Shown piece after piece: positions 19,494-64,000 of a DNA stretch of 64,000 bases. The stretch is taken from NCBI GenBank assembly GCA_002269645.1, contig NIVC01001304.1, forward strand, positions 1 through 64,000. Direction: 5' to 3'. The DNA is from Macrostomum lignano (taxonomy: Eukaryota). Position numbers and translations under genes: made by a program. Position 1 is the first letter of the stretch. Each line of letters begins with the position of its first letter. The notes below the pieces were generated by a model. The model saw nothing but the letters and a program-made list of their open reading frames with translations, was not told the origin of the DNA and searched no databases.

Positions 19494-31578
<12,085 letters not shown>

Positions 31579-49920: not shown

Positions 49921-51617
49921 TGCAACCCCACTATGATATTTTAATATTTTAATTGTATTTATCTTTTATTTTTAATCTCATTCTTTGTCTGTCCACTTGT
50001 TTAACTTTTTAATGCTTGATTTTATCTTATAAGGTTTAAAGGTTCTCTATCCTTTTGTTAAGACTAACTTTGATTAGTTTGTCAAAAATAATTTAGATGT
50101 TCTTGTTCCCCTTTTTAGCTTTAGCCTCTGTGTTTCTATCCTTTGATGAAACTATTTTCAATTAATATATACAATATTTTTATATAGAAAATGTTCATCT
50201 ATCCAACAATTGACTAATTAAATATTGATAAAATGGACACAGTGCATATTTTTTTATTTATGAAATATGCCAAAATATGCAATGTACACAGTTACTCTAT
50301 TTCATTTAGAACTTAATTAAAATATTGAATATTTTTCAATGACTATTGGCTTTTTGTTAGCCCAATGATTTATTATACTTGTTTAATATTAATTATGGTG
50401 ATAATAATTGTAATAACAATACCATAAAAAATAATAGTAATATTAGGAATAATAAATATAATGTTTAAGAACTTCTGTGGCTGTGTTTTGCACTTTTATA
50501 TCTTGTATAAATAGTTGATTTTAAAATGCAGATTTTATATTTTTTAAAAGAGCTATGATGAAGCTTGCTTACTAAGAAAAGAGAAACAAATTGAAATAAT
50601 ATATTTAAATAGTTTATGCATATGTATGTTTAGTTTTGTGTTCATATATTTTATTGTAAACAAAGTCAAAGAGTATTACAATACTAAAAGGAGACTAAAT
50701 TAAAGTTTCCAAAAATATAGTTACCCCCCAAAAAATCGCACCCAAAACTCAAGTTTTTTCTCACATTATTTAAAAGAAGAAATGTAGGCCTAGTGCCTAC
50801 AATTTGAATATAATTTTAGGTCCTAATCATTCACTGCACAATCTCAATCAATGCTACTAACAACTTGAACTTGAACAAGCAATTACAAAGCGCAAATCAC
50901 ATTAATTACATTTACAACACAATTAACTTGTCGGTCTTAACTTAACTTCAATATGCCACTGTTTGGTTAAAAAGTTACTTTGAATACTACTGACAAACTG
51001 TCTAAGTTCCATATAATAGTTCGGTACTATTCTGTCGTAAATTGTTTGTTAAAATATAAAATTCATTACGTAGTTATCGTGACTTTTAAATTATTGTAAC
51101 TCCTCCGGTAGCAAAATTGCCTATTTTTGCATTCTTAGTAAATAGGATTGTGCTTTAGAGAGTAAAGCTGCACTAAATTTAAATTTCCTTGTCGAGACTT
51201 TCGGTTTAGTTTTGAAAATCAAAGGCCTTGACGCGAGGCATTTAATCAAAGGCCTGAGATATCATGATATGTTCCCCTTTGGACAACAAAGGTAAACATA
51301 CATGTAGATTGGTTGTGGTGGAGTGGCCAAGATCCCACAAATGAGGTTAGTGACCTAGGAGTTTCTGGTAGTTAATTAATTTTACACCCAAAACTACTTT
51401 TAACGAAACCGTTGAGTCCCGCTATTGACGAAGATTTGAAGATTTAACCAAGAGTTTTTGGAAAGGGCCGACGATGAGGCGTCTAAGGAATGGTCTATAT
51501 TTAATGCTGAGAGCGAGAACCTATGCTTAGGGGCCGTAAAGAGTAAAGTGAAGGTGACGCTCTAATTTTTTATATAGCTCGATCCTTTGGGTCCTTCGAT
51601 GAGCTACGGTAAAGTAC

Positions 51618-51860
51618 GCACGCGAAGGCGTATTCAGCATGCCAGTGAAGTATGAGACAGACTAGGCCCATGGGCTAAGGTCTGCGATGCTTCACGCCTG
51701 CCCCTATCTTCAGCAGGTCAAGGCTGGTGGGAGGTCTGCACCCTCTATTTGCCTCTGGCAGCCGCAGACCCCCCCCCACGCTGTCTCGCAAGTCGACCCA
51801 GGGTACTCGTCCCCGCGTGTGTTCAAGGCAGTCCCTAGGGCTGCTGGACAGACTGGGCTC
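51618..51860 (+). ncRNA. HDV-like self-cleaving ribozyme (predicted) at the 5' end of the retrotransposon
   Basis: P1 GCACGCG 51618-24 / CGCGUGU 51814-20 (G1-U wobble); P3 GGG 51801-03 / CCC 51811-13; L3 UACUCGU; P1.1 A51805-U51822 and C51806-G51821; P4 GCAGUCC/GGGCUGC; J4/2 CAGA 51849-52; P2 CCCA 51797-800 / UGGG 51854-57. Confidence 0.8.
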
Positions 51861-52135
51861 CGGCGCTGGCGACCCTATCCAGTGGCTTCGGCCGAATTTG
51901 GGTATGCGGGTCTGGCTCGCCAACCTGCAGGCCGTGGTACTGCTCAACGTACTCTCTAATGCCTAAGGTGTTGACCGTGCCGATGGGCTGGAAGGCCGGG
52001 GAGTAGTCCGGTCGCAAGCGGTCCCCCTCCTGGTGTCGGGCCAGCCTTGAGGGTGCTATTGGCCTACTGCCCGGTCAGGTGGAGCGGCCGGGTGGGTACC
52101 GCGCCCCTTTGAGGGTAGCCCACCAACCTTTTATC

Positions 52136-53656
52136 ATGGCCTTCGAGCCGACTATGGATAAACAAGCTATTTCTAGGGATGGGGACCCTTCTAAACCCCA
52201 ACCTCAGTCCGAAGGACCGGCCGGCCCTGCTGGCAGATCCCAACCGACTGATTCAACTGTGGCAAAGGAAGGACCGGCTGGCTCTGCTGGCAGATCCGAC
52301 CAGAGCTACCAAACTCAAAATACCCTAAGACCTGCCAGCTCCGCTGGTGGATCTAAGGGAACCGCGAGCTCTGAGCCTAAAGGACCGGCCAAATCTGGCA
52401 GATCCGATGAAGCTCAGCGGGCTCGGCTTGAGCGCAAACGCGCTAAACAACGCGCCAAAAGGCAGGCCAAGAAGGGAGCTGCGGGGGCCAAAGCGGCGGC
52501 GTCCACCATGGATGCTGAAGCGACTGGAGTCCCAAGGCAACCAGGCGGGCCGGCCGGTGGAAGCTCCAGTAGTTCAGCGGCGGCGCTCCCTGGAGCTGCT
52601 GCCGCGGCTGCTGAGGCCGAAACCACGGCGCAACAAATGGCCACTGCCAACAAGGAGGTTCCTTCGGGAGCTACCTTTGCGGCGAAGGCCAAGGCCAAAA
52701 TCCCGGGAGTGATCATCCAAGGTCGCGACCAGGACTGGACCACTGATCAGCTTCAAAAAGTGTGGAGTGCTGTTGACTCCTATCTGATTGAGCTGACTGT
52801 CGAGGAGGGAATCTCCATCGGCGTTGAGCGGATGGTGCTGCGAAGCACATTCGTTCTTATTGCTCCTAGCAGCGAGGAGGACGCTCGGCGGCTGCTCCAG
52901 CGGCTACCGACGGTCTCCTTGGATGCTGACCTTGGCGGAGCTCTTTTTCTTCGCGAGGGCCAGCGTCCAAAGACGATACCCTATGTGGTTTTCGTCCCTG
53001 CTAAGAGCACCGCAGCTGGACCAGACGTTATTCGCCGGGTCCTACTGCGTCTGAACCCCGACCTCCCTGCTAGTGGACTGGTGTATCACCGTAAAGTCCG
53101 CAGGGGGGAGACGGGCAACTCAATTGTCCTCGGCCTTTCCAGCACTTGGGCGAGTCGGTACCCTAATGGATCCTCTTTCCAGCTGGGTGCCCTCAAGCTC
53201 AAGTTGCGCCGAGGAAAGTCTGCCAAAGGGAAGGCTACTGCCAACCCCGGCATCTCCGGCAAGAGCGGGGCGCAGTCTAAGGCCCAAGGAAAGGCGCAAG
53301 CCGATCCCAAAGCCAAAGCTGCATCTCGCCCCTCTGCTAGCAGCAGTTCGGCGACCGCGGTAACGGCTCCGGCCGAGCCCCGGGAACCAAACCTGCCAGT
53401 CGGAGAAGGAGTTGAGGACGAGGCCGGGTCTTCGGAATCCGAGCTCTCCTCGGCCACCTTGGTGGGGTCTGAAGGTAAAGATGCAGGTGAGGAAGCTTCC
53501 TCCATCCTGTCATCGGAGCCTGAGGAGTCTGCTGGGGGGCCGGTGGGGGTGAGGAGGCCATGGACGTCGACCAACTCCCATCTCCCAGTCAAGCCCCAGC
53601 GGCCTGGGACGAGGACGATCTGTTGTCCAAGTCTCCTTGATGGCCCTGGGCTCTAG
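52136..53656 (+). CDS. Retrotransposon ORF1 (no zinc knuckles; central DUF4780-like domain)
   Basis: First ATG at 52136. Low-complexity N- and C-termini flank a globular core whose LLRLNPDLP...G...IVLGL...FQLG..KLKLR segment resembles ORF1 of LOA/R1-type elements (by eye). Confidence 0.8.
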   Translation: MAFEPTMDKQAISRDGDPSKPQPQSEGPAGPAGRSQPTDSTVAKEGPAGSAGRSDQSYQTQNTLRPASSAGGSKGTASSEPKGPAKSGRSDEAQRARLERKRAKQRAKRQAKKGAAGAKAAASTMDAEATGVPRQPGGPAGGSSSSSAAALPGAAAAAAEAETTAQQMATANKEVPSGATFAAKAKAKIPGVIIQGRDQDWTTDQLQKVWSAVDSYLIELTVEEGISIGVERMVLRSTFVLIAPSSEEDARRLLQRLPTVSLDADLGGALFLREGQRPKTIPYVVFVPAKSTAAGPDVIRRVLLRLNPDLPASGLVYHRKVRRGETGNSIVLGLSSTWASRYPNGSSFQLGALKLKLRRGKSAKGKATANPGISGKSGAQSKAQGKAQADPKAKAASRPSASSSSATAVTAPAEPREPNLPVGEGVEDEAGSSESELSSATLVGSEGKDAGEEASSILSSEPEESAGGPVGVRRPWTSTNSHLPVKPQRPGTRTICCPSLLDGPGL

Positions 53657-53679
53657 CCAGATATTGCATTTAATACAGT

Positions 53680-56600
53680 ATGACTAAGCTCCACGCTGCC
53701 AAAGGAGCGACATTCTGTCTGCAAATAAATTTACAGCATTGCGTATCTGCGTCAGTAAATCTGATGAAGATTGCTGAGCTGTACAGGCCAGGCCTCATCC
53801 TGATCCAGGAACCCTGGATGCGCAACGGTAAGTTGCCCAACATTCCCTCTGGCTACTCTGATTTTTATGTGTGTGGCCCGGGGAACAGCCGCCCTAGAGC
53901 GGCTATCCTCGCTGCTAGCCATCTCCAGGCTTGGCTGAGGACTGATCTCTCTGATGGAGACCTTTGCGTCATCCAATCTAATCATTTCTCTCCGCGTACG
54001 TGTCTTGTTGCCTCGGTTTATATCCCAGGCGACAGAGACCCTGCTCCGAGAGTTTACTGCGCCTTGCGCAGTACTGCGAGTCCCAGAACGCTGAGCTGTG
54101 CTTAGGGGGCGACCTCAACGCGCACCACAAGCACTGGGGCAGCAAAGATACCAACACTAGAGGAGAGGAGCTTCTGGCCCTCATCTCTAACACAAACCTC
54201 ATGCTCTGCAACCGCGGCAGCACTCCTACCTTTAATAATGGCAGATGGACCGAGGTCCTCGACGCCACACTCGTTACCCCAAGACTCTTTGACAGAGTCA
54301 AGGAGTGGAGAGTCTGGTCTGAGGAGCCCTCCCTGTCTGACCACTGCTTTATCGCCTTTAATATCGCGGACACTAAAACCCAGTCTCCGATCACTTGGAG
54401 ACGCAATATCCGCAACACTGATTGGGCGGCCTACAAGGCTGCCCTTGATCTGCACCTGCAGGAACTCACGGACTTACGTCCGATTGAGACCTGCGAGGAT
54501 GTGGATCATATGGCTGAGACGCTGACAGGTTGCATTATTGCAGCCTACGAAGCGGCTTGTCCTGCTCGCGCCTACAGAGGCAAGACCTCGGCGCCGTGGT
54601 GGAACCCGGAGCTGGGGAAACTCAGGCGGAAGGCCAAAAGCCTTCATCGCCGTGCCATGAAGACCGGAAACCCGGAGGACATGGAGCTTTTCCGGCAAGC
54701 CTCCCGCAATTTCAAATCTGAAGTGCGCAAGGCCAAGGAATGTAAGTGGCGCCAATTCTGCAATGAATTGGATCAAGACAGACCTACTTCTAGGCTTGTC
54801 AAGGCCCTTACAATGGACAAAATGTCCAAATTAGCCATGATCAAAAAAGATGATGGCTCTCTTACTAAAGACCCTGAAGAAGTGCTTCAGCATATGCTTA
54901 GCACATTCTTCCCGAGGGTACCTACTGCTAGACCGGAGCCCAACCATTCGATGGATGGAGCCACCCTAGCGGCGGGCATTGTCACTGAAGACCTAATCGC
55001 TCGTGCGGTCAGAACCTTCAAACCCTTCAAATCTCCTGGACCTGATGGTATCTACCCTGTTCTCCTTCGTGAAGCAGCCAAGATACCCTCGTTCCTGAGA
55101 CTCACCCGCAATCTTATGCGGGCCTCTATCCAGCTGGGATACGTTCCCAAAAGCTGGACTGAAGCTCGAGTAGTCTTTATTCCCAAACCTGGGAAGGGTG
55201 ACTACCAAAGCGTCAAGGCCTTCCGGCCAATTAGCTTAACGTCAGCAATGCTTAAGCTCACTGAGAGGCTTATTCTCTGGCGGCTGCTCTCCTGCGAGCT
55301 GACAGCGATGCCCCTCAGCAATAATCAGCACGCCTTCCGTACCGGGAGGTCGACTGACAGCGCCCTGCATGCGATTGTCGAAAAGATTGAACGGGCGGTA
55401 CTGGGTGACGGTTACGCCCTGGCTCTCTTTCTTGACATTGTTGGCGCCTTCGACAACGTTATCTTTGAAGCGTTTCAGAGGGCCCTTCAAAATCGCAAAG
55501 CTCATGCTACCCTCATACGGTGGATCATGTACATGATCTCCAACCGTACGGTCACTGCCCAACTTCTTGGGCAAACTGCCTCCACCAGAGTCTGTAAGGG
55601 TGGACCCCAAGGCGGAGTCCTCACCCCGACGCTCTGGAACCTGGTCATGGACGCTCTTCTGAGTGACTCCCGACCTGACCCCGTCTTCAAAGTCGGGTAT
55701 GCTGATGACGTCACGGCCATTGTGGCAGGACCGTCTCCCAGCACGCTCAGGGATCTGATGCAGAGCTTTATCCGCAAAGCAGAATCCTGGGCCAATGACA
55801 ATGGTTTGGAACTCTCTGAGCCCAAAACCGTTGCCATTATGTTTACCAGCAGACTACGCTGGAACATACGTCCTCTGCAGCTCTACGGCAGAGATATTGC
55901 CTTCGCGCACCAGACCAGATGTCTCGGGGTCACACTTGACCACCGGCTCAACTGGTCCTTCCACGTGAAAGCAAAAGCTAAGCGTGCCTCAGCCATCCTG
56001 GCCCAGCTCCGACGAGCACTTGGCACTTCTTGGGGTCTATCCCCAAAGCGGCTTTGGTGGATCTATACTTCCGTAGTTAGACCTGCCATTACGTACGCCT
56101 CTGTTGTCTGGGTTAGCGCTACCCAGGTCAAAAGCCATGCAGACCTGCTCAACACGATCCAAGGCAGAGCGTGTAGGCTCATCTGCAACGCCACCAGGTC
56201 CACGCCCTTTGCTGGCATGGGGGCCTTTCTTAATCTTCCGCCTCTTGACCTCTTCATCAGGGGTGAGGCGGCTAGAACGACGCGGCGTCTAATTGATGCC
56301 GGCGTCAAATTCATTTACATGAGAGCACCTGCTAAGCGGAACCTTGTCCCGCATAGCGATCTGTGCCTCAACTTTCTCAACGAGTGTCAGGCCAATCGCG
56401 TCTTCACCGATGGCATTGCCTCAACGCTCAACCTGAGACAGCGCTACTCCGTAGCTATCGACTCGCGCGATAACATCAATGACCATTGGAACCCTGGTGA
56501 GCTTCATTGCTACACCGACGGTTCTAAGCAGTCAGCCAACACCGGCTTTGGTGTTGGAATCTTTCTGAACGGGAGGGTCATCGCTACCCACGCTCAATAC

Positions 56601-57419
56601 ACTGGGGTCAACTCCAGTGTTTTCCAAAATGAAGTTCTGGCCATCAGCTCCTGCACTGCAGAGCTTCTCGCCACTGGCGTTACTGGTAAGAACATCATTT
56701 TCCATTCGGACAGCCAAGCTGCCTTGCACGCCATCAGTGGCTGCAGCACCAACTCTGCTACAGTCCTTGACTGTATCAAACTCCTCAATGTGTTGGGTTC
56801 CGCCAACAAAATTACCCTTAAGTGGGTTCCGGGGCATGTGGGGATCCGAGGAAATGAGTTGGCTGACACCCTTGCAAAAGTTGGTGCCTCCGGCTCCTCT
56901 CTCGGCCCCGAACCTCTTGTCCCGATTCCTGGCTGTGTCATCGACTCGCGCATCAAAGCGTGGATCAGGACTCAGCACCGCTCGACTTGGGCGAACCGCA
57001 CGAACTGCAGGCAATCCAGAGGCGCTGTCCCTCAGCCCTCTCACCAGCTCCGGAAGCTCCTCTTGCGCCTCTCGCGCAGAGACATCCGGGCTGCCACCAT
57101 GACCCTCTCTGGTCACGGCTGCTTCTCCAGGCACCAGTACCTGCAGGGCAACGCCACCAACGCCACCTGTAGTTTCTGCAACTCAGGTGACGAAACCGCT
57201 GAGCATTTCGTCAGCATCTGTCCCGCCTTCACGCGGGCCAGACTCACTTACCTCGGGCCACACACATCTATTACTGAAGCGTGCAAACCCGAAAACTTTA
57301 ATCAGCTCATGCGCTACCTTCGGGCCACCCGCAGGGCTGAACTCTCCTTTCCAGAGAGCACCATAGCTGCTGGCGACACTGGGGGACCTCCCTGGGTGGC
57401 GCCAACCCTCCGTCCATAG
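53680..57419 (+). CDS. Retrotransposon ORF2: AP endonuclease, reverse transcriptase, RNase H and CCHC motif (one frameshift near 54048)
   Basis: APE: QINLQH, LIQEP, GGDLNAH, SDH. RT: PGPDGI, FRPISLTS, LDIVGAFD, PQGGVL, YADD, WGLSPK..WIY..VVRP. RNase H: YTDGSK, SDSQAAL, WVPGH.GI.GNE.AD.LAK. C-terminal CSFC...ETAEHFVSIC. Confidence 0.96.
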
Positions 57420-58701
57420 CGACGCGTCGGCCGTTCAGGGACTAGCGGAATGGGCGCCCGCGCCTTCCCGCTGTGTCCCCTCCGGGACAGCCCTGCAGCT
57501 AAGTCAAAGTAAGTCAAGTACGGTAAAGTACTAAGTAATGCTAATGTCTTCTGATGCCCTGTAATGCAATCGAGTTATTTAGTAATTAAAAGCATTAATA
57601 TTTATTAGCAGTCAATAATTTAAATCCATGGCAGCTTCCATTCTCTCGGCAGCTTCAATTCTCTCGGCATCTTCAGAATCTGAATACATGTGCACCTAAC
57701 TCTCTTGCCATTAGACTTGACCATTGCCCAACAGATTATACTGAAGTGTGAACTATGAGAAGCATGAGAAAAAATATTAAGAATGAACTAAACTGTGCAC
57801 GTGAGCATTGAGAAAAATTTTTAAAGACTGAGTTGGGGGTCGTCGTAGTCAAAGTGATGCACGGTCAAATTAAAATGGTATTTTTGTGCTCTTAAATATT
57901 GAATAGCTCTGTAAACAGTTCGTGGACCACACTCGAATGAATGCTCAGTACAAGTGTCTGCATTCCATTCAAAAATCAGTGCAATTTTTTTATTTCACAG
58001 TCAATCGTAAAATTTATGTAACTAATTAATAGAATGCGGTGTTATAGCGTAATTATGCGTGGAGTTGCTACAGATGTTTCTGTACCATTTGAAAATCAAG
58101 CGTGACAATTATAGCGCTATCAGGTGATGGGTAATGTAGGCTGGGATTGCCATTGAATAAGTCGCTAGCAGTGGGATTACCTGAAGTGCCGAGGTGCTTA
58201 TACAAGGTTGATATATAAACACTACAATTAAGCATTGAATCAAAAAATGTTTTTAAAGACAAGCATGCAACAGCAATCTGCAAATTCAAGATTTCATGCA
58301 TTGAATGAAGCTTGGGTTGCATAAAATTTTCAGAAGCGCGGCTCGATCAGTCTTTAAAGCCGCGCTGTCGGTTGTACGTTTCGAATAAAATTCATTTGCA
58401 TGTACATTCGCATAAATAATTGTTTAATTTTATCTACCAGAGTGCATTGAACGCAATGGATTGGAAAGGGTGGTGCTAATTGCCAAATTGAAATTGCAAA
58501 GCATTTTAACTATGATTTTATCAGTTCAAGCAGGTCAGGCAGCGTACATGTAGGTAGCATTTCGTATCTACGTATCTTAATTCTTACATCTCTCTTCATT
58601 CCTTCAGCTTTCGAACTTCTATTTTGTTAATTCGCACAACTTATGACGGAAAGGTGGTGATTTTTGTTTTTTACTTTTTCCATAAACTGAGTTGACAAAA
58701 G

Positions 58702-59014: not shown

Positions 59015-61833
59015 TTACTCCGATTTGATTGCAGCATCCTCTTTCGGTGCAGCCTCCTGATCTTCATCAGCCTGAGTCTCGCCCGTCACCACCATGAAAA
59101 CCTTCTGCAGAGCCAAGGTCAGTCCGTGGTAGCGGCGCTGGAAGGATGCCGGCTTTCGCTCCCAGGCCACGCAGAGAAAGTACACTGGAATGCCGACGGC
59201 GATGAAGCCGAGGCACTTCAGGCTCTGCTCTGGCGCCTGGTAGATCGTCATGGCAACCAAGCCAAAGCACCACAGCAGCACGAACACGGGAATGGGCAGG
59301 GGGATCTTGATCGGCCTGTGCAGGTTTGGCCGCAAGTAGCGCAAATAGAGCAGCGAAGACATAGTGAGGGTCAGGATGATGTTGAACGCAAAACCCAGCA
59401 GGTTGATCAGCGTCCAGATGTCAGCGAGGAAAAGCAGAGCCAGAGAAATTATGAGCTGCGGAGTGTTAGAAAACATAGTTTATTAAAGTCTACTAGCGGC
59501 TGTTGCCAGCAACCTTCCCCTGCCTAAAATTACACTGAATAAAAGCTCTCATCTCTACCCCGATGTACACTGAATAGCAGCTATCATCTCTACCCCGGTG
59601 TACACTGAATAGCAGCTATCATCTCTACCCCGGTGTACACTGAATAGCAGCTATCATCTCTACCCGATGTACACTGAATAGCAGCTATCATGCACCTCTA
59701 CCATGATGTACACTGAATAGCAGTTATCATCTCTACCCAATGTACACTGAATAGCAGCTATCATGCACCTCTACCATGATGTACACTGAATAGCAGCTAT
59801 CATGCACCTCTACCCCGATATACACTGAATAGCAGCTATCATCTCTACCCAAAGTACACTGAATAGCAGCTATCATGCACCTCTACCATGATGTACACTG
59901 AATAGCAGCTATCATCTCTACCCCGATGTACACTGAATAGCAGCTATCATGCACCTCTACCCCGATGTACACTGAATAGCAGCTATTCAGTATGTTCTAT
60001 TCAGATACATCTCTACCCATGCAATGTACACTGAATAGCAGCTATCATCTCTACCCATGCAATGTACACTGAATAGCAGCTATCATCTCTACCCATGCAA
60101 TGTACACTGAATAGCAGCTATCATCTCTACCCCGATGTACACTGAATAGCAGCTATCATCTCTACCCCGGTGTACACTGAATAGCAGCTATCATCTCTAC
60201 CCGATGTACACTGAATAGCAGCTATCATGCACCTCTACCATGATGTACACTGAATAGCAGTTATCATCTCTACCCAATGTACACTGAATAGCAGCTATCA
60301 TGCACCTCTACCATGATGTACACTGAATAGCAGCTATCATGCACCTCTACCCCGATATACACTGAATAGCAGCTATCATCTCTACCCAAAGTACACTGAA
60401 TAGCAGCTATCATGCACCTCTACCATGATGTACACTGAATAGCAGCTATCATCTCTACCCCGATGTACACTGAATAGCAGCTATCATGCACCTCTACCCC
60501 GATGTACACTGAATAGCAGCTATCATCTCTACCCAATGTACACTGAATAGCAGCCATCCACTCTACCCAAAGATCACATTAAATAAAAATCACCAAAGCT
60601 GCTCACCATAACGATGAGCGATGGCAGAGGCGTGAGCTGCTTATAGCTGATCATGGCCAAGAACTCGGGCAGCTGGCCCTCCCGAGCGCCCACATAGAAA
60701 ACCCGGGAGATGCTCATCGTGCCGCCGTTGATGGCACCGAACACCGAGATGGCGACGAACAGCGGCATGAGGAAGGCAGCCGGGCCCATCTTGTCGTTGG
60801 CGAAGGTGATGGCCACCGCGTTGGAGGAGATGATCTGCTCCGGGGACAGCACGGCAGCGTAGGCCACATTTGCCAGCAAGTAGACCGCGGTCACGATGGT
60901 GATACTGATGACTATCGCTAGGGGAAGATTTCTGTAGGGATTCTGCAGCTCCTCGATCAGAAAGTTCAGGTAGTTCCTGACAGTTCAATGGATGGGTTCT
61001 GGCGATAAATTTTCTAAATTCAAGATAGTAAAGTTTTTTGGTCCAAACCGTCATTCGATGGTTCAAGATGTGTAGAAAAGTGTCAAAGTATCGGTGTCAG
61101 GATCTGCAGATGGGTGTCAGGATCTGCAGATGGGTGTCAGGATCTGCAGATGTGTGTCAGGATCTGCAGATGGAAGTCAGGATCTGCAGATGGGTGTCAG
61201 GATCTGCAGATGGGTGTCAGGATCTCGATCAGGATCTCTATATAGACTTCAGTGTCTCCAAAGATTTCCTTGTGTTATCGGGACGCATCATATGTTGCTA
61301 CTCATGAGTAGTAACAGCTGCATTGAACCCGACTTTCCAATTCCACGCACCATCCGCCGTAAGCCCAGAAACCGGCGTAGAACCCGAAGGCCAGGGTTTT
61401 GCCATTGATGTCCGAGCCCTCGAATGCGTCCTGCAGGTTGTTGCTGTAGCCTGCGAGTGGAAATGGGGAGCGGAGGGTGGGTGAACTGCATGAGGTCCCG
61501 TCAGAGAACTCAGGCTCAGAATTTCTTAGAAATGCTAATGACTCTCAGAGCAACGTCTCATAGAAATATTCACTATTGCTTTGCGTTTTTCGAATTTTGG
61601 AAGTGTCTCTAATGCCAACTCAGAATGAAGAGCGTTCTCAGTGCCTTGAGCACACCCGATCGGCGCTGACAGAACAAACTGCACGGCAGTGGGGCTGCTC
61701 TGTTTACCTTTGCCAACGTGAATGAAGCCGAGAATGATGATGATCACGAGGGCCAGCAGCTTGCATCCGGTGAAAATTATCTGAGTTTTGGCCGCCCACT
61801 TCACGTTGATGCAGTTGATGGCCGTCAGCAGGC
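59015..61833 (-). CDS. SLC7 L-type/y+L amino-acid transporter light chain, last 4 exons (5' exons beyond the window)
   Basis: complement join(61833-61708,61450-61351,60976-60607,59455-59015), in phase. [80 protein letters not shown]. Confidence 0.93.
59545..60570. repeat. 34-40-bp minisatellite (TGTACACTGAATAGCAGCTATCATCTCTACCCCGA) with a ~400-bp higher-order duplication
   Basis: Read directly; last SLC7 intron. Confidence 0.94.
61094..61225. repeat. 20-bp minisatellite (GTCAGGATCTGCAGATGGGT)
   Basis: Read directly; SLC7 intron. Confidence 0.9.
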
Positions 61834-62189
61834 CTGCGGGATGGAGATGGCGGGAGGCTGGGGTTGGGCTTGACTCAGGCGATGCTATGAGATCCTTCAC
61901 AGACTCTCCAGTTGCCATCGCTGTCTTCTGTGCTCATTTAAACCCGAGTCCCGAGCGCCCCATGCCTCGGGCGGTGACCTACAAGGCCCACTTTTTTGAG
62001 TCTGGACTTGGCAACTCAATCAAGCATGCAAAACAATTTTATTTTATTTTGGAATTCTCACTCTATGGATTTGTGTTCCTCCTCGGCATCCATATTCTCC
62101 CTATTTCCAGCATCGCTTACTTCCCATTCTCACTGGTCTGATACCAATTCCTCCTAATCACATCACTGCCTGGTCCCACACTCCCCGTT

Positions 62190-64000
62190 CCCATCACTCC
62201 CCGATCCCATCACTCTTTGATCCTATCACTCCTTGATCCCATCACTCCATGATCCCCTCACTCCATGATCCCATCACTCCCTGATCCCATCACTCCCTGA
62301 TCCAATTACTCCCTGATCCAATTACTCCCTGATCCCATCACTCCCTGATCCCATCACTCCCTGATCCCATCACTCCCTGATCCAATTACTCCCTGATCCC
62401 ATCACTCCATGATCCCCTCACTCCCTGATCCCATCACTCCCTGATCCCATCACTCCATGATCCCCTCACTCCCTGATCCCATCACTCCCTGATCCCATCA
62501 CTCCCTGATCCCATCACTCCCTGATCCAATTACTCCCTGATCCCATCACTCCATGATCCCCTCACTCCCTGATCCCATCACTCCCTGATCCAATTACTCC
62601 CTGATCCCATTACTACCTGATCCCATCACTCCTTGATCCCATCACTCCATGATCCCATCACTCCCTGATCCCATCACTCCCTGATCCAATTACTCCCTGA
62701 TCCAATTACTCCCTGATCCCATCACTCCCTGATCCCATCACTCCCTGATCCCACCACTCCCTGATCCAATTACTCCCTGATCCCATCACTCTTTGATCCT
62801 ATCATTCCTTGATCCCATCACTCCATGATCCCCTCACTCCATGATCCCATCACTCCCTGATCCCATCACTCCCTGATCCAATTACTCCCTGATCCAATTA
62901 CTCCCTGATCCCATCACTCCCTGATCCCATCACTCCCTGATCCCACCACTCCCTGATCCAATTACTCCCTGATCCCATCACTCTTTGATCCTATCATTCC
63001 TTGATCCCATCACTCCATGATCCCCTCACTCCATGATCCCATCACTCCCTGATCCCATCACTCCCTGATCCAATTACTCCCTGATCCAATTACTCCCTGA
63101 TCCCATCACTCCCTGATCCCATCACTCCCTGATCCCATCACTCCCTGATCCAATTACTCCCTGATCCCATCACTCCATGATCCCCTCACTCCCTGATCCC
63201 ATCACTCCCTGATCCCATCACTCCATGATCCCCTCACTCCCTGATCCCATCACTCCCTGATCCCATCACTCCCTGATCCCATCACTCCCTGATCCAATTA
63301 CTCCCTGATCCCATCACTCCATGATCCCCTCACTCCCTGATCCCATCACTCCCTGATCCAATTACTCCCTGATCCCATTACTACCTGATCCCATCACTCC
63401 TTGATCCCATCACTCCATGATCCCATCACTCCCTGATCCCATCACTCCCTGATCCAATTACTCCCTGATCCAATTACTCCCTGATCCCATCACTCCCTGA
63501 TCCCATCACTCCCTGATCCCACCACTCCCTGATCCAATTACTCCCTGATCCCATCACTCCCTGATCCCATCACTCCCTGATCCCATCACTCCCTGATCCA
63601 ATTACTCCCTGATCCCATCACTCCATGATCCCCTCACTCCCTGATCCCATCACTCCCTGATCCCATCACTCCCTGATCCAATTACTCCATGATCCCATCA
63701 CTCCATGATCCAATTACTCCCTGATCCCATTACTACCTGATCCCATTACTACCTGATCCCATCACTCCATGATCCCCTCACTCCATGATCCCCTCACTCC
63801 CTGATCCCCTCACTCCATGATCCCCTCACTCCATGATCCCATCACTCCCTGATCCCATCACTCCCTGATCCCATCACTCCCTGATCCCATCACTCCCTGA
63901 TCCAATTACTCCCTGATCCCATTACTACCTGATCCCATTACTCCATGATCCCATCACTCCCTGATCCCATCACTCCCTGATCCCAGCACTCCCTGATCCC
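62190..64000. repeat. 16-bp minisatellite (GATCCCATCACTCCCT), running off the window
   Basis: Read directly; presumably an SLC7 intron. Confidence 0.96.

What the first reader, a model, noticed from the sequence alone, without database searches (positions are those of the whole stretch)
51618..51860. HDV-like ribozyme with a ~170-nt J1/2 insert and an unusual compensated P1.1, cleaving exactly at the element's first base
Seen: the first 7 nt after the TSD (GCACGCG) pair with CGCGUGU about 190 nt downstream, with the G1-U wobble. Between and after them the nested double pseudoknot is complete: P2 CCCA/UGGG, P3 GGG/CCC, L3 UACUCGU, J1/4 GU, P4 hairpin GCAGUCC/GGGCUGC and J4/2 CAGA (candidate catalytic C51849). 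P1.1 uses A-U plus C-G instead of the usual two C-G pairs, a compensatory change. J1/2 (51625-51794) is itself structured (GUGAAGUAU/AUGCUUCAC, CAGAC/GUCUG, GGUCUGC/GCAGACC). Established: HDV-like ribozymes process the 5' ends of R2, R4, RTE, SART, Baggins and L1Tc elements. Inference: self-cleavage defines this element's 5' end, and the large insert may add a promoter or translation-initiation function. P2 is short (4 bp, 6 with a bulge) and its register with P3 is ambiguous.
Basis: partly seen in the sequence, partly recalled or inferred. Interest (0 to 1): 0.9.

Follow-up and report, generated by a model that had tools for sequence, protein, structure and literature searches.

The report
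HDV-like ribozyme heading a flatworm LINE
The first ~245 bases of a Macrostomum lignano non-LTR retrotransposon fold into a hepatitis-delta-virus-like self-cleaving ribozyme with a large structured insert, a known way for such elements to cut their RNA free at its exact 5' end, so this is a good new example of a known device, not a new one.

Summary
P1 starts at G51618, the first base after an exact 12-nt target-site duplication. The element (51618-57519) is a non-LTR retrotransposon with ORF1 and an APE/RT/RNase H ORF2, and the host is Macrostomum lignano. Structure descriptors alone are weak evidence, because loose versions hit both strands equally. Anchored to the element's first base, the P1+P3+P1.1+P2 combination arose in 15 of 30,000 shuffles. 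The strongest support is comparative. A relative with 57% ORF2 identity (L001) begins at the homologous base and keeps P1, P1.1, P2, P3 and P4 through compensatory changes. More distant relatives (L005, L061/L023, L006) have the same architecture about 2.2 kb upstream of ORF2, with 12-bp P2 helices. All carry a 114-199-nt helix-closed domain in J1/2. Large HDV-like ribozymes with such a P1.2 domain and a 12-bp P2 are already described (drz-Agam-2-1), and 5'-terminal HDV-like ribozymes are known for R2, R4, Baggins, RTE and L1Tc. Verdict: very probably a real ribozyme, and a new member of a known kind. Cleavage by this copy is untested; its P2 is short, its P4/J4/2 junction is atypical, and its ORF2 is frameshifted.

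The parts
51606..51617 (+). 5' copy of the target-site duplication, ACGGTAAAGTAC
   Evidence: Exact 12-mer found only here and at 57520-57531.
51618..51624 (+). P1 5' strand GCACGCG. The predicted cleavage site is 5' of G51618, the element's first base.
   Evidence: Pairs with 51814-51820. L001 starts at the homologous base. P1 covaries.
51625..51791 (+). J1/2: linker AAG, then the structured P1.2 domain (about 51628-51789, closed by GCG/CGC plus CAGC/GCUG), then linker AA
   Evidence: Folds. The same layout (A-rich 3-5-nt linker, closing helix, 2-nt linker) is seen in L001, L005, L061 and L006.
51645..51695 (+). Conserved hairpin arm inside P1.2 (GUGAAGUAU/AUGCUUCAC, CAGAC/GUCUG, apical GGCC-CAUG-GGCU). 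The block 51664-51690 is nearly identical in L001.
   Evidence: Alignment. Both lower stems change compensatorily in L001.
51792..51800 (+). P2 5' strand. The contiguous core is CCCA 51797-51800. By homology with relatives the strand starts at G51792 (GUCGACCCA).
   Evidence: In relatives the 12-nt P2 strand starts at the same AA|GUC position.
51801..51813 (+). P3 (GGG/CCC) enclosing L3, UACUCGU. A51805 and C51806 form the 5' side of P1.1.
   Evidence: P3 and P1.1 covary in relatives. L3 matches the pattern U-N-C-N-C-G-U shared with relatives.
51814..51820 (+). P1 3' strand, CGCGUGU
51821..51822 (+). J1/4, GU, the 3' side of P1.1
   Evidence: It is AG or GG in relatives, with matching changes in L3.
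51823..51848 (+). P4 hairpin (core 51827-51845, loop CUA). The basal pairs U23-A48 and C24-G47 are specific to this copy.
   Evidence: P4 is present and covaries in all relatives.
51849..51853 (+). J4/2, CAGAC. C51849 is the candidate catalytic cytosine.
   Evidence: Relatives have CUGC, CUGA, CUAAAC and CUAG at the same place. The catalytic role is inferred.
51854..51864 (+). P2 3' strand. The core is UGGG 51854-57. A possible bulged extension (U59-A96, C60-G95, GGC 62-64 with GUC 92-94) is inference.
   Evidence: L001 has UCUGAG followed by a matching distal GGC/GCC.
51865..52135 (+). Rest of the 5' UTR, with blocks conserved in L001 although the reading frames differ
   Evidence: Alignment.
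52136..53656 (+). ORF1, from the first ATG. It has no Pfam domain.
53680..57419 (+). ORF2: APE endonuclease, reverse transcriptase, RNase H and a C-terminal Cys/His motif. It is broken by a frameshift inside the APE domain between about 54000 and 54105.
57420..57519 (+). 3' UTR and tail, ending in the tandem units TAAGTCAAAG TAAGTCAAGT
   Evidence: L001 ends with the same GCAGCTAAGTCAAAGT.
57520..57531 (+). 3' copy of the target-site duplication

Best explanation
Window 51618 to about 51864 encodes a large HDV-like self-cleaving ribozyme at the 5' end of a non-LTR retrotransposon of Macrostomum lignano.

Proposed mechanism (inferred, not shown):
- The element is transcribed as part of a longer read-through or host transcript.
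- The nascent RNA folds into the nested double pseudoknot (P1, P1.1, P2, P3, P4).
- The helix-closed P1.2 domain inserted in J1/2 holds the far ends of P1 and P2 together.
- C51849 in J4/2, with a Mg2+ ion, catalyses attack of the 2'-OH of C51617 on the phosphate 5' of G51618.
- This releases an element RNA that begins exactly at G51618 with a 5'-OH and no cap.
- That RNA serves as both mRNA and retrotransposition template, which explains why full-length insertions begin at this base, next to the TSD.

Shown here: the sequence elements, their position relative to the TSD, and their conservation with compensatory changes in relatives.
Inferred: catalysis, co-transcription, and the role of P1.2.

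The confidence of 0.82 is for the region being a genuine HDV-like ribozyme of its family. That this particular copy still cleaves efficiently I put at about 0.55.
For: 1. All helices are present at the stated coordinates. P1 begins at the first base after an exact 12-nt TSD.
2. The element is a bona fide non-LTR retrotransposon: Exo_endo_phos_2, RVT_1 and RNase_H in ORF2, and close protein hits named from M. lignano.
3. Anchored shuffle test: 15 of 30,000 shuffles reach P1+P3+P1.1+P2/CNR.
4. L001 (ORF2 57% identical) begins at the base homologous to G51618. Its first 6 nt, GCCUGC, are Watson-Crick complementary to the 6 nt that follow its P3 hairpin (GGG UCUCCGU CCC GCAGGC). Its P1.1 changed from A-U/C-G to C-G/U-A. 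P2 is CUCAGA/UCUGAG and P4 is a 9-bp hairpin.
5. L005 (= L069), L061, L023 and L006 (ORF2 33-36% identical, as listed) have the same architecture about 2.2 kb upstream of the ORF2 match, with 12-bp P2 helices and a G-C-N-R junction after P4.
6. On the curated core alignment, 97.7% of cells pair against 60% in shuffles and 35-45% when partners are slid. Twenty of 22 pairs show changes on both sides.
7. L061 and L023 are 90% identical from the first G of P1 onward and unrelated upstream.
8. [quoted passage not shown] Cleavage at the element's 5' end is reported for R4, Dong, Baggins, L1Tc and RTE (PMC3774820; PMC6765202).
Against: - No Rfam family matches the window, at gathering score or at E<=10 locally, and none matches the relatives. 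The variable 114-199-nt inserts would defeat those models, so this is only a weak negative.
- The minimum-free-energy fold of 51618-51860 does not contain P1 and is not unusually stable (z = -1.3).
- P2 in this copy is only 4 contiguous bp, which is chance level by itself.
- This copy has GGA where relatives have a single G between P4 and the candidate catalytic C.
- J4/2 is not identical among relatives.
- ORF2 of this copy is frameshifted, so the copy is not autonomous and may carry other lesions.
- The curated alignment used was built from segments I chose because they pair, so its numbers lean towards the structure.
- No other M. lignano copy could be retrieved.
- There is no experimental cleavage evidence.
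Confidence: 0.82

Rival explanations
1. The family has a real ribozyme, but this copy is an inactive or very slow relic. In this reading the 2-nt GA insertion before the catalytic C, the 4-bp P2 and the frameshifted ORF2 mark a decayed copy whose 5' end was made by its active parent.
For: GGA in place of G before the C. P2 is 4 bp here against 6-12 bp in relatives. ORF2 is frameshifted. The MFE fold prefers alternatives to P1. Published work shows that shortening P2 from 12 to 7 bp while keeping a long P1.2 slows an Agam-2 ribozyme about 175-fold (PMC4908430).
Against: The TSD is perfect at 12 of 12, which suggests a young insertion. The inserted GA can pair with U51823 and C51824 (UC here, GC in L001), giving a continuous P4 with the C directly after it, as in ribozymes that lack a J1/4 linker. 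P1 keeps the G-U wobble, and L3 keeps U, C, C and G at the expected positions.
Confidence: 0.3
2. The conserved 5' structure is mainly something other than a ribozyme, such as a protein-binding pseudoknot, an internal promoter or an IRES-like element. In this reading the 5' end is set by transcription initiation and the HDV-like appearance is incidental.
For: P1.2 contains a block that is nearly identical in L001 (51664-51690) even though the proteins are only 57% identical, and further 5' UTR blocks are conserved. Dual use of the same 5' region is documented for L1Tc (promoter Pr77 plus ribozyme) and for R2 (protein-binding pseudoknot and proposed IRES).
Against: The conserved features are exactly those that define the HDV fold: P1 starting at base 1, a 3-bp P3 with a 7-nt L3, a covarying 2-bp P1.1, a pseudoknotted P2, and a C after P4. 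The more distant relatives do not share the P1.2 sequence but keep the core. The documented dual functions add to cleavage; they do not replace it.
Confidence: 0.07
3. Chance resemblance: GC-rich 5' UTR sequence that happens to satisfy a permissive descriptor.
For: Loose descriptors are satisfied about once per 8-10 kb and equally on both strands. P1 complementarity alone arises in 24.6% of shuffles. There is no Rfam hit.
Against: The anchored probability is about 5e-4. The same architecture is found at the homologous place, with compensatory changes, in five independent relatives.
Confidence: 0.04
4. The fold uses a distal J4/2 and P2 3' strand: C51893 GAAUU followed by UGGGU 51899-51903, pairing with ACCCA 51796-51800. 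P4 would then be a roughly 70-nt branched domain.
For: GGCCGAAUUUGGGU resembles the HDV GGCGAAUGGG junction as I recall it (from my own knowledge), and it gives a 5-bp P2.
Against: In L001 the homologous block (GGCUAAACCGGGU) cannot pair with that element's P2 5' strand, whereas the proximal UCUGAG does. All relatives have a simple P4 hairpin followed directly by G-C-N-R and the P2 3' strand.
Confidence: 0.07

Closest known systems
drz-Agam-2 family of large HDV-like ribozymes (Anopheles gambiae; Webb et al. 2009; Webb, Nguyen, Myszka and Luptak 2016, PMC4908430)
   Same: Nested double pseudoknot with cleavage at the first nucleotide of P1. A large, stably base-paired domain (P1.2) is inserted in J1/2 and joined by short single-stranded linkers. 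The relatives L005, L061/L023 and L006 also have the extended 12-bp P2 described for Agam-2.
   Different: There is no detectable sequence or Rfam-model similarity. The window copy and L001 have a short or interrupted P2 (4 and 6 contiguous bp). The P1.2 domain here is larger and branched (about 160 nt) and has a lineage-specific conserved hairpin. The host is a flatworm LINE. I could not compare directly with the Agam-2 sequence, which was not available in the tools.
5'-terminal HDV-like ribozymes of non-LTR retrotransposons: R2, R4/Dong, Baggins, RTE, SART, L1Tc (Eickbush and Eickbush 2010, 2013; Ruminski et al. 2011; Sanchez-Luque et al. 2011)
   Same: The ribozyme occupies the first bases of the element, so self-cleavage of a co-transcript would generate the exact 5' end. 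The element has APE and RT, and a TSD abuts the cleavage site.
   Different: The element is a two-ORF APE/RT/RNase H LINE from Macrostomum lignano whose clade I did not determine. No paper in the searched library links Macrostomum to ribozymes in any substantive way. The list of families in Ruminski et al. 2011 is from my own knowledge, because the paper was not held.
CPEB3 and genomic HDV ribozymes (the archetypes)
   Same: A G1-U wobble closes P1, P3 is 3 bp, and L3 is 7 nt. UACUCGU compares with HDV UCCUCGC and CPEB3 UUCACGU as I recall them. J1/4 is GU followed directly by P4, as in CPEB3, and a C follows directly after P4 (archetype sequences from my own knowledge).
   Different: P1.1 is A-U plus C-G, not two G-C pairs. 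J1/2 is 167-176 nt, not a few nucleotides. J4/2 is CAGAC, not CGAA.

Membership tests
HDV-like self-cleaving ribozymes (nested double pseudoknot) | P1 of 6-7 bp whose first nucleotide (G, usually in a G-U wobble) is the cleavage site | tested here: met
   GCACGCG/CGCGUGU with G51618-U51820. P1 covaries in relatives: 4 of 6 pairs have changes on both sides.
HDV-like self-cleaving ribozymes (nested double pseudoknot) | A 3-bp P3 closing an L3 of about 7 nt, immediately 5' of the P1 3' strand | tested here: met
   GGG UACUCGU CCC at 51801-51813, directly followed by the P1 3' strand. P3 is GGG/CCC, ACC/GGU or GCC/GGC in relatives.
HDV-like self-cleaving ribozymes (nested double pseudoknot) | P1.1: one or two pairs between L3 positions 2-3 and J1/4 | tested here: met
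   A51805-U51822 and C51806-G51821. Relatives have C-G/U-A or C-G/C-G, and both pairs show changes on both sides.
HDV-like self-cleaving ribozymes (nested double pseudoknot) | P2 pseudoknot between the sequence 5' of P3 and the sequence 3' of J4/2 | tested here: inconclusive
   Only CCCA/UGGG (4 bp) is contiguous in the window, which is chance level by itself. P2 is clear in relatives: 6 bp in L001 and 12 bp in L005, L061 and L006.
HDV-like self-cleaving ribozymes (nested double pseudoknot) | A P4 hairpin followed by J4/2 that starts with the catalytic cytosine (C-N-R-A type) | tested here: met
   P4 is 51823-51848, followed by C51849 AGA C. Relatives have G-C-U-G/A at the same place. This copy has GGA before the C, not a single G.
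HDV-like self-cleaving ribozymes (nested double pseudoknot) | Mg2+-dependent site-specific self-scission that gives a 2',3'-cyclic phosphate and a 5'-OH and depends on the J4/2 cytosine | not testable with these tools
   This needs in vitro transcription and cleavage assays with mutants.
Rfam HDV-type families (HDV_ribozyme, CPEB3, drz-Agam-1, drz-Agam-2-2, HDV-F-prausnitzii and others) | A covariance-model score at or above the gathering threshold | tested here: not met
   There were no HDV-type hits in the window at gathering score or at E<=10 in 51400-52100, and none in seven relatives at E<=1. This is expected if the models cannot absorb a different 114-199-nt insert.
Large HDV-like ribozymes of the drz-Agam-2 type | A stable base-paired domain (P1.2) in J1/2, joined by short linkers | tested here: met
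   Linker AAG, then a helix-closed domain 51628-51789, then AA. The same layout is found in L001, L005, L061 and L006. The definition comes from PMC4908430.
Large HDV-like ribozymes of the drz-Agam-2 type | An extended P2 of about 12 bp | tested here: not met
   The window has 4 contiguous bp, or 9 bp if two single-nucleotide bulges are allowed, which is inference. The feature is met in L005, L061/L023 and L006.
5'-terminal ribozymes of non-LTR retrotransposons | The cleavage site coincides with the element's 5' end, as defined independently | tested here: met
   P1 starts at the first base after the 12-nt TSD. The L001 contig starts at the homologous base. L061/L023 similarity starts at P1. 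Other M. lignano copies could not be obtained.

The most novel reading that the evidence does not exclude
The roughly 160-nt P1.2 domain may be more than a structural clamp. Its apical hairpin arm (51645-51695, with block 51664-51690 nearly identical in a relative whose proteins are only 57% identical) and the conserved non-coding blocks further down the 5' UTR (51865-52135) could form a second functional module. After cleavage has left an uncapped 5'-OH RNA, this module might recruit the element's own proteins or the ribosome, acting as an IRES-like or packaging signal, or it might act as an internal promoter in the DNA. That would make this a composite ribozyme-plus-recruitment 5' UTR in a LINE from a laboratory model flatworm.
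Probability: 0.25. Interest if true: 0.55.

Novelty: new member of a known kind. Interest (0 to 1): 0.35.

Why it matters
This extends 5'-terminal HDV-like ribozymes, and specifically the large type carrying P1.2, to a two-ORF APE/RT/RNase H LINE family of Macrostomum lignano, a genetically tractable flatworm. It also extends them to a set of related elements seen in Logan and metagenome assemblies. It gives a precise, testable definition of the family's 5' end, which helps transposon annotation and the interpretation of read-through transcripts. The family is also a natural series in which P2 length (4, 6 or 12 bp), P1.1 composition and P1.2 size vary together, which could be used to test the published 'pinch' model. 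It does not change what is known about how such elements work.

Tried and rejected
- Rfam scans of the window (gathering score, and E<=10 locally) and of seven relatives found no HDV-type hit.
- A second copy was sought inside the window and none was found.
- Other M. lignano copies were sought by exact-protein look-up of UniProt hits and of the window's ORF1 and ORF2. None is on record.
- The ORF1 core domain had no homologues in the protein database.
- Relaxed Python descriptors (P1 of 6 bp or with one mismatch, L3 of 6-8 nt, G-U allowed in P1.1, P2 of at least 6-8 bp) gave as many or more minus-strand hits, for example 274 plus against 552 minus, or 18 against 13. I rejected them as evidence and as a way to find more members.
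- Thermodynamic folding of 51618-51860 does not recover P1 and gives z = -1.3, so it is not informative for a pseudoknotted RNA.
- The distal J4/2-P2 alternative (C51893/UGGGU 51899) was rejected because it is not conserved as a pairing in L001.
- L033 and L078 have HDV-like cores at plausible positions but no convincing P2 or J4/2, so I left them out of the alignment.
- No TSDs were found in the relatives, possibly because the contigs do not include the elements' 3' ends.
- Ruminski et al. 2011 and Jimenez et al. 2015 could not be read.
- The clade of the element within the non-LTR retrotransposons was not determined.

Full report
**What is there.** I read window 51400-52100 directly. Every element in the finding is present at the stated coordinates.
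- P1: GCACGCG (51618-24) pairs with CGCGUGU (51814-20), with G51618-U51820 as the closing wobble.
- P2: CCCA (51797-800) pairs with UGGG (51854-57).
- P3: GGG (51801-03) pairs with CCC (51811-13), enclosing L3, UACUCGU.
- J1/4: GU (51821-22). Its G pairs with C51806 and its U with A51805, forming P1.1.
- P4: a hairpin with core GCAGUCC-CUA-GGGCUGC. It can be extended at its base by G27-U45, C24-G47 and U23-A48.
- C51849 follows directly after that helix, and J4/2 reads CAGAC.

**The element.**
- The 12-mer ACGGTAAAGTAC occurs exactly twice in the window, at 51606-17 and 57520-31, against 0.08 expected. The insertion therefore runs from G51618 to about 57519, and P1 begins at its first base.
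- It ends in the tandem units TAAGTCAAAG TAAGTCAAGT.
- It carries an ORF1 with no Pfam domain. ORF2 has Exo_endo_phos_2, RVT_1 and RNase_H domains and a frameshift inside the endonuclease domain between about 54000 and 54105.
- The nearest named proteins are from Macrostomum lignano.
- The element sits in AT-rich DNA between minisatellite arrays.

**How much of this is chance.**
- I wrote descriptor scans. A loose core (G-initiated 7-bp P1, 3-bp P3, 7-nt L3, 2-bp P1.1, J1/2 up to 350 nt) occurs 4 times on the plus strand and 7 times on the minus strand of the window. It occurs 51 and 61 times in 450 kb of related loci.
- More relaxed versions give as many or more hits on the antisense strand. 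A descriptor match alone therefore proves nothing.
- I then anchored the test to the independently defined first base and shuffled the 5' UTR 30,000 times. A P1 complement appears in 24.6% of shuffles, with an adjacent P3 hairpin in 1.8%, with P1.1 in 0.14%, and with a 4-bp P2 plus C-N-R in 0.05%.
- The short P2 contributes almost nothing by itself.
- No Rfam model matches. The minimum-free-energy fold does not recover P1 (z = -1.3). Neither result is decisive for a pseudoknot interrupted by a 170-nt insert.

**Comparative evidence.** There is no second copy in the window, and other M. lignano copies could not be reached. An ORF2 search led to two sets of relatives.

*L001*, a 6.5-kb Logan contig with ORF2 57% identical:
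- The contig begins at the base that aligns with G51618.
- Its first six bases, GCCUGC, are perfectly complementary to the six bases (GCAGGC) that follow its P3 hairpin, GGG-UCUCCGU-CCC.
- Relative to the window, P1 positions 3 and 4 changed on both strands.
- P1.1 changed from A-U/C-G to C-G/U-A: L3 went from UAC to UCU, and J1/4 from GU to AG.
- P2 is CUCAGA/UCUGAG. P4 is a different 9-bp hairpin. J4/2 is CUGC.

*Metagenome relatives.* A scan with an ORF2 alignment gave 80 more loci with 28-40% identity:
- L005 (= L069), L061, its 90%-identical relative L023, and L006 have the same architecture about 2.2 kb upstream of the ORF2 match.
- Each has a 7-bp P1, an L3 of the form NCNNCGU or NCNNAGU, a covarying P1.1, a simple P4 followed by G-C-U-R, and a 12-bp P2.
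- L061 and L023 are alike from the first G of P1 onward and unrelated upstream.

*Covariation.* On a 52-column alignment of the core segments:
- 97.7% of cells form standard pairs, against 60% in shuffles and 35-45% when partners are slid.
- 20 of 22 pairs show changes on both sides.
- I chose those segments myself, and P1, P3 and P1.1 were required by the scan that found the relatives. The counts therefore lean towards the structure.
- The 12-bp P2 helices, the P4 hairpins, the positions of the candidates and the a priori test on L001's terminal hexamer are not subject to that bias.

**The J1/2 insert.**
- In all members J1/2 is 114-199 nt with the same layout: a 3-5-nt A-rich linker after P1, a long closing helix, and a 2-nt linker (AA or UA). 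The P2 strand follows, starting GUC or GCC in four of the five members and CGA in L006.
- This is the P1.2 peripheral domain described for large natural HDV-like ribozymes. [quoted passage not shown] PMC4513843 also notes extensive stem-loops in its J1/2 and P4.
- The long structured insert is therefore not a new feature. Its most economical role is structural.
- The window and L001 additionally share a hairpin arm inside P1.2 (51645-51695). Its lower stems covary, and its apical part (51664-51690) is almost identical in the two. They also share several blocks further down the 5' UTR, although the upstream reading frames differ.
- These features leave room for a second function, but I could not test one.

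**Peculiarities of this copy.**
- P2 is 4 contiguous bp. By homology the P2 strand would be GUCGACCCA, pairing with UGGG-C-UC-C-GGC, that is 9 bp with two bulges. This is inference.
- Between P4 and the candidate catalytic C the window has GGA where all relatives have G. The extra GA can pair with U51823 and C51824, so the C still follows a helix directly.
- A distal alternative exists: C51893-GAAUU followed by UGGGU 51899-903. It looks HDV-like, but it is not conserved as a pairing in L001.
- Together with the ORF2 frameshift, these points mean that the activity of this particular copy is uncertain, even though the family's ribozyme is well supported.

**Comparison with what is known.**
- Self-cleavage at the exact 5' end by HDV-like ribozymes is established or reported for R2 in Drosophila, R4/Dong, Baggins, RTE and L1Tc (PMC3774820; PMC6765202; PMC3185411 listed).
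- Roles proposed for these ribozymes are release from co-transcripts and promotion of translation of the uncapped RNA.
- No paper in the library connects Macrostomum with ribozymes in any substantive way.
- The finding is therefore a new member of a known kind: a large, Agam-2-type HDV-like ribozyme heading an APE/RT/RNase H LINE in a flatworm, with relatives in environmental assemblies.

**Verdict.**

| Claim | My estimate |
|---|---|
| The region is a genuine HDV-like ribozyme of its family | 0.82 |
| This copy still cleaves efficiently | about 0.55 |

Interest is moderate to low at 0.35.

Noticed in passing
window 1-50000 and 59500-64000: The window is dominated by dozens of different minisatellite arrays with periods from 4 to 207 nt. 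They include an 8.5-kb array of a 27-mer (22536-31038, about 316 copies, 97% matches) with strong strand asymmetry (GC skew -0.44), and a 16-mer array that runs off the window end (62153-64000). The retrotransposon lies in AT-rich DNA between two arrays.
   Followed up: partly
window 53680-54105 / 54000-57419: ORF2 is split by a frameshift inside the APE endonuclease domain. The N-terminal part is in one frame (53680-54105) and the rest in another (from 54000). This copy is therefore not autonomous, unless the break is an assembly error.
   Followed up: partly
window 51865-52135 versus L001 240-600: Several non-coding blocks downstream of the ribozyme are conserved between the window and L001, for example CCGGGGAGUAGUCCGG, UUGGCCUACUGCC and GCGGCCGGGUGGGUAC. 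The open frames upstream of the ORF1 ATG differ by one base between the two, so the conservation is at the RNA or DNA level and not the protein level.
   Followed up: no
window 51664-51690 (inside P1.2): The block AGGCCCAUGGGCUAAGGUCUGCGAUGC is almost identical in L001 (one loop base and one stem base differ). The stems below it change compensatorily. It is not shared with the more distant relatives.
   Followed up: partly
window 51890-51903: GGCCGAAUUUGGGU resembles the G-C-GAA-U-GGG junction of the genomic HDV ribozyme and could pair with ACCCA 51796-800. The homologous L001 block (GGCUAAACCGGGU) is conserved in sequence but cannot form that pairing.
   Followed up: yes
window 57495-57519; L001 5945-5965: The 3' tail is a short tandem repeat, TAAGTCAA(A)G, present twice in the window. 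L001 ends with the same GCAGCTAAGTCAAAGT. The pentamer AAGUC also marks the P1.2/P2 junction at 51790-94 and in L005 and L061. This may be coincidence.
   Followed up: no
L002 1804-2100 and L035 2200-2500: This is another HDV-like candidate: P3 CCC/GGG, L3 UCCUGGC, P1 GCCUAU/AUGGGC, a 9-bp P2 and J1/2 of about 190 nt. It lies only about 400-600 nt upstream of the ORF2 match, so its position differs from the other relatives. It may be chance.
   Followed up: no
L033 27-420 and L078 1032-1300: Both have HDV-like cores upstream of ORF2. L033 has L3 UCCUCGU with P1 GGCUGC/GCAGCU, and L078 has L3 UCUGCGU with P1 GUCUCGA/UCGAGGC. Neither has a convincing P2 or J4/2, so their status is unresolved.
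   Followed up: partly
L005 2646-2665 and L061 7491-7510: The flanks 20 nt upstream of P1 in two unrelated insertions both begin with CAGAAAU. This could be a target-site preference or coincidence.
   Followed up: no
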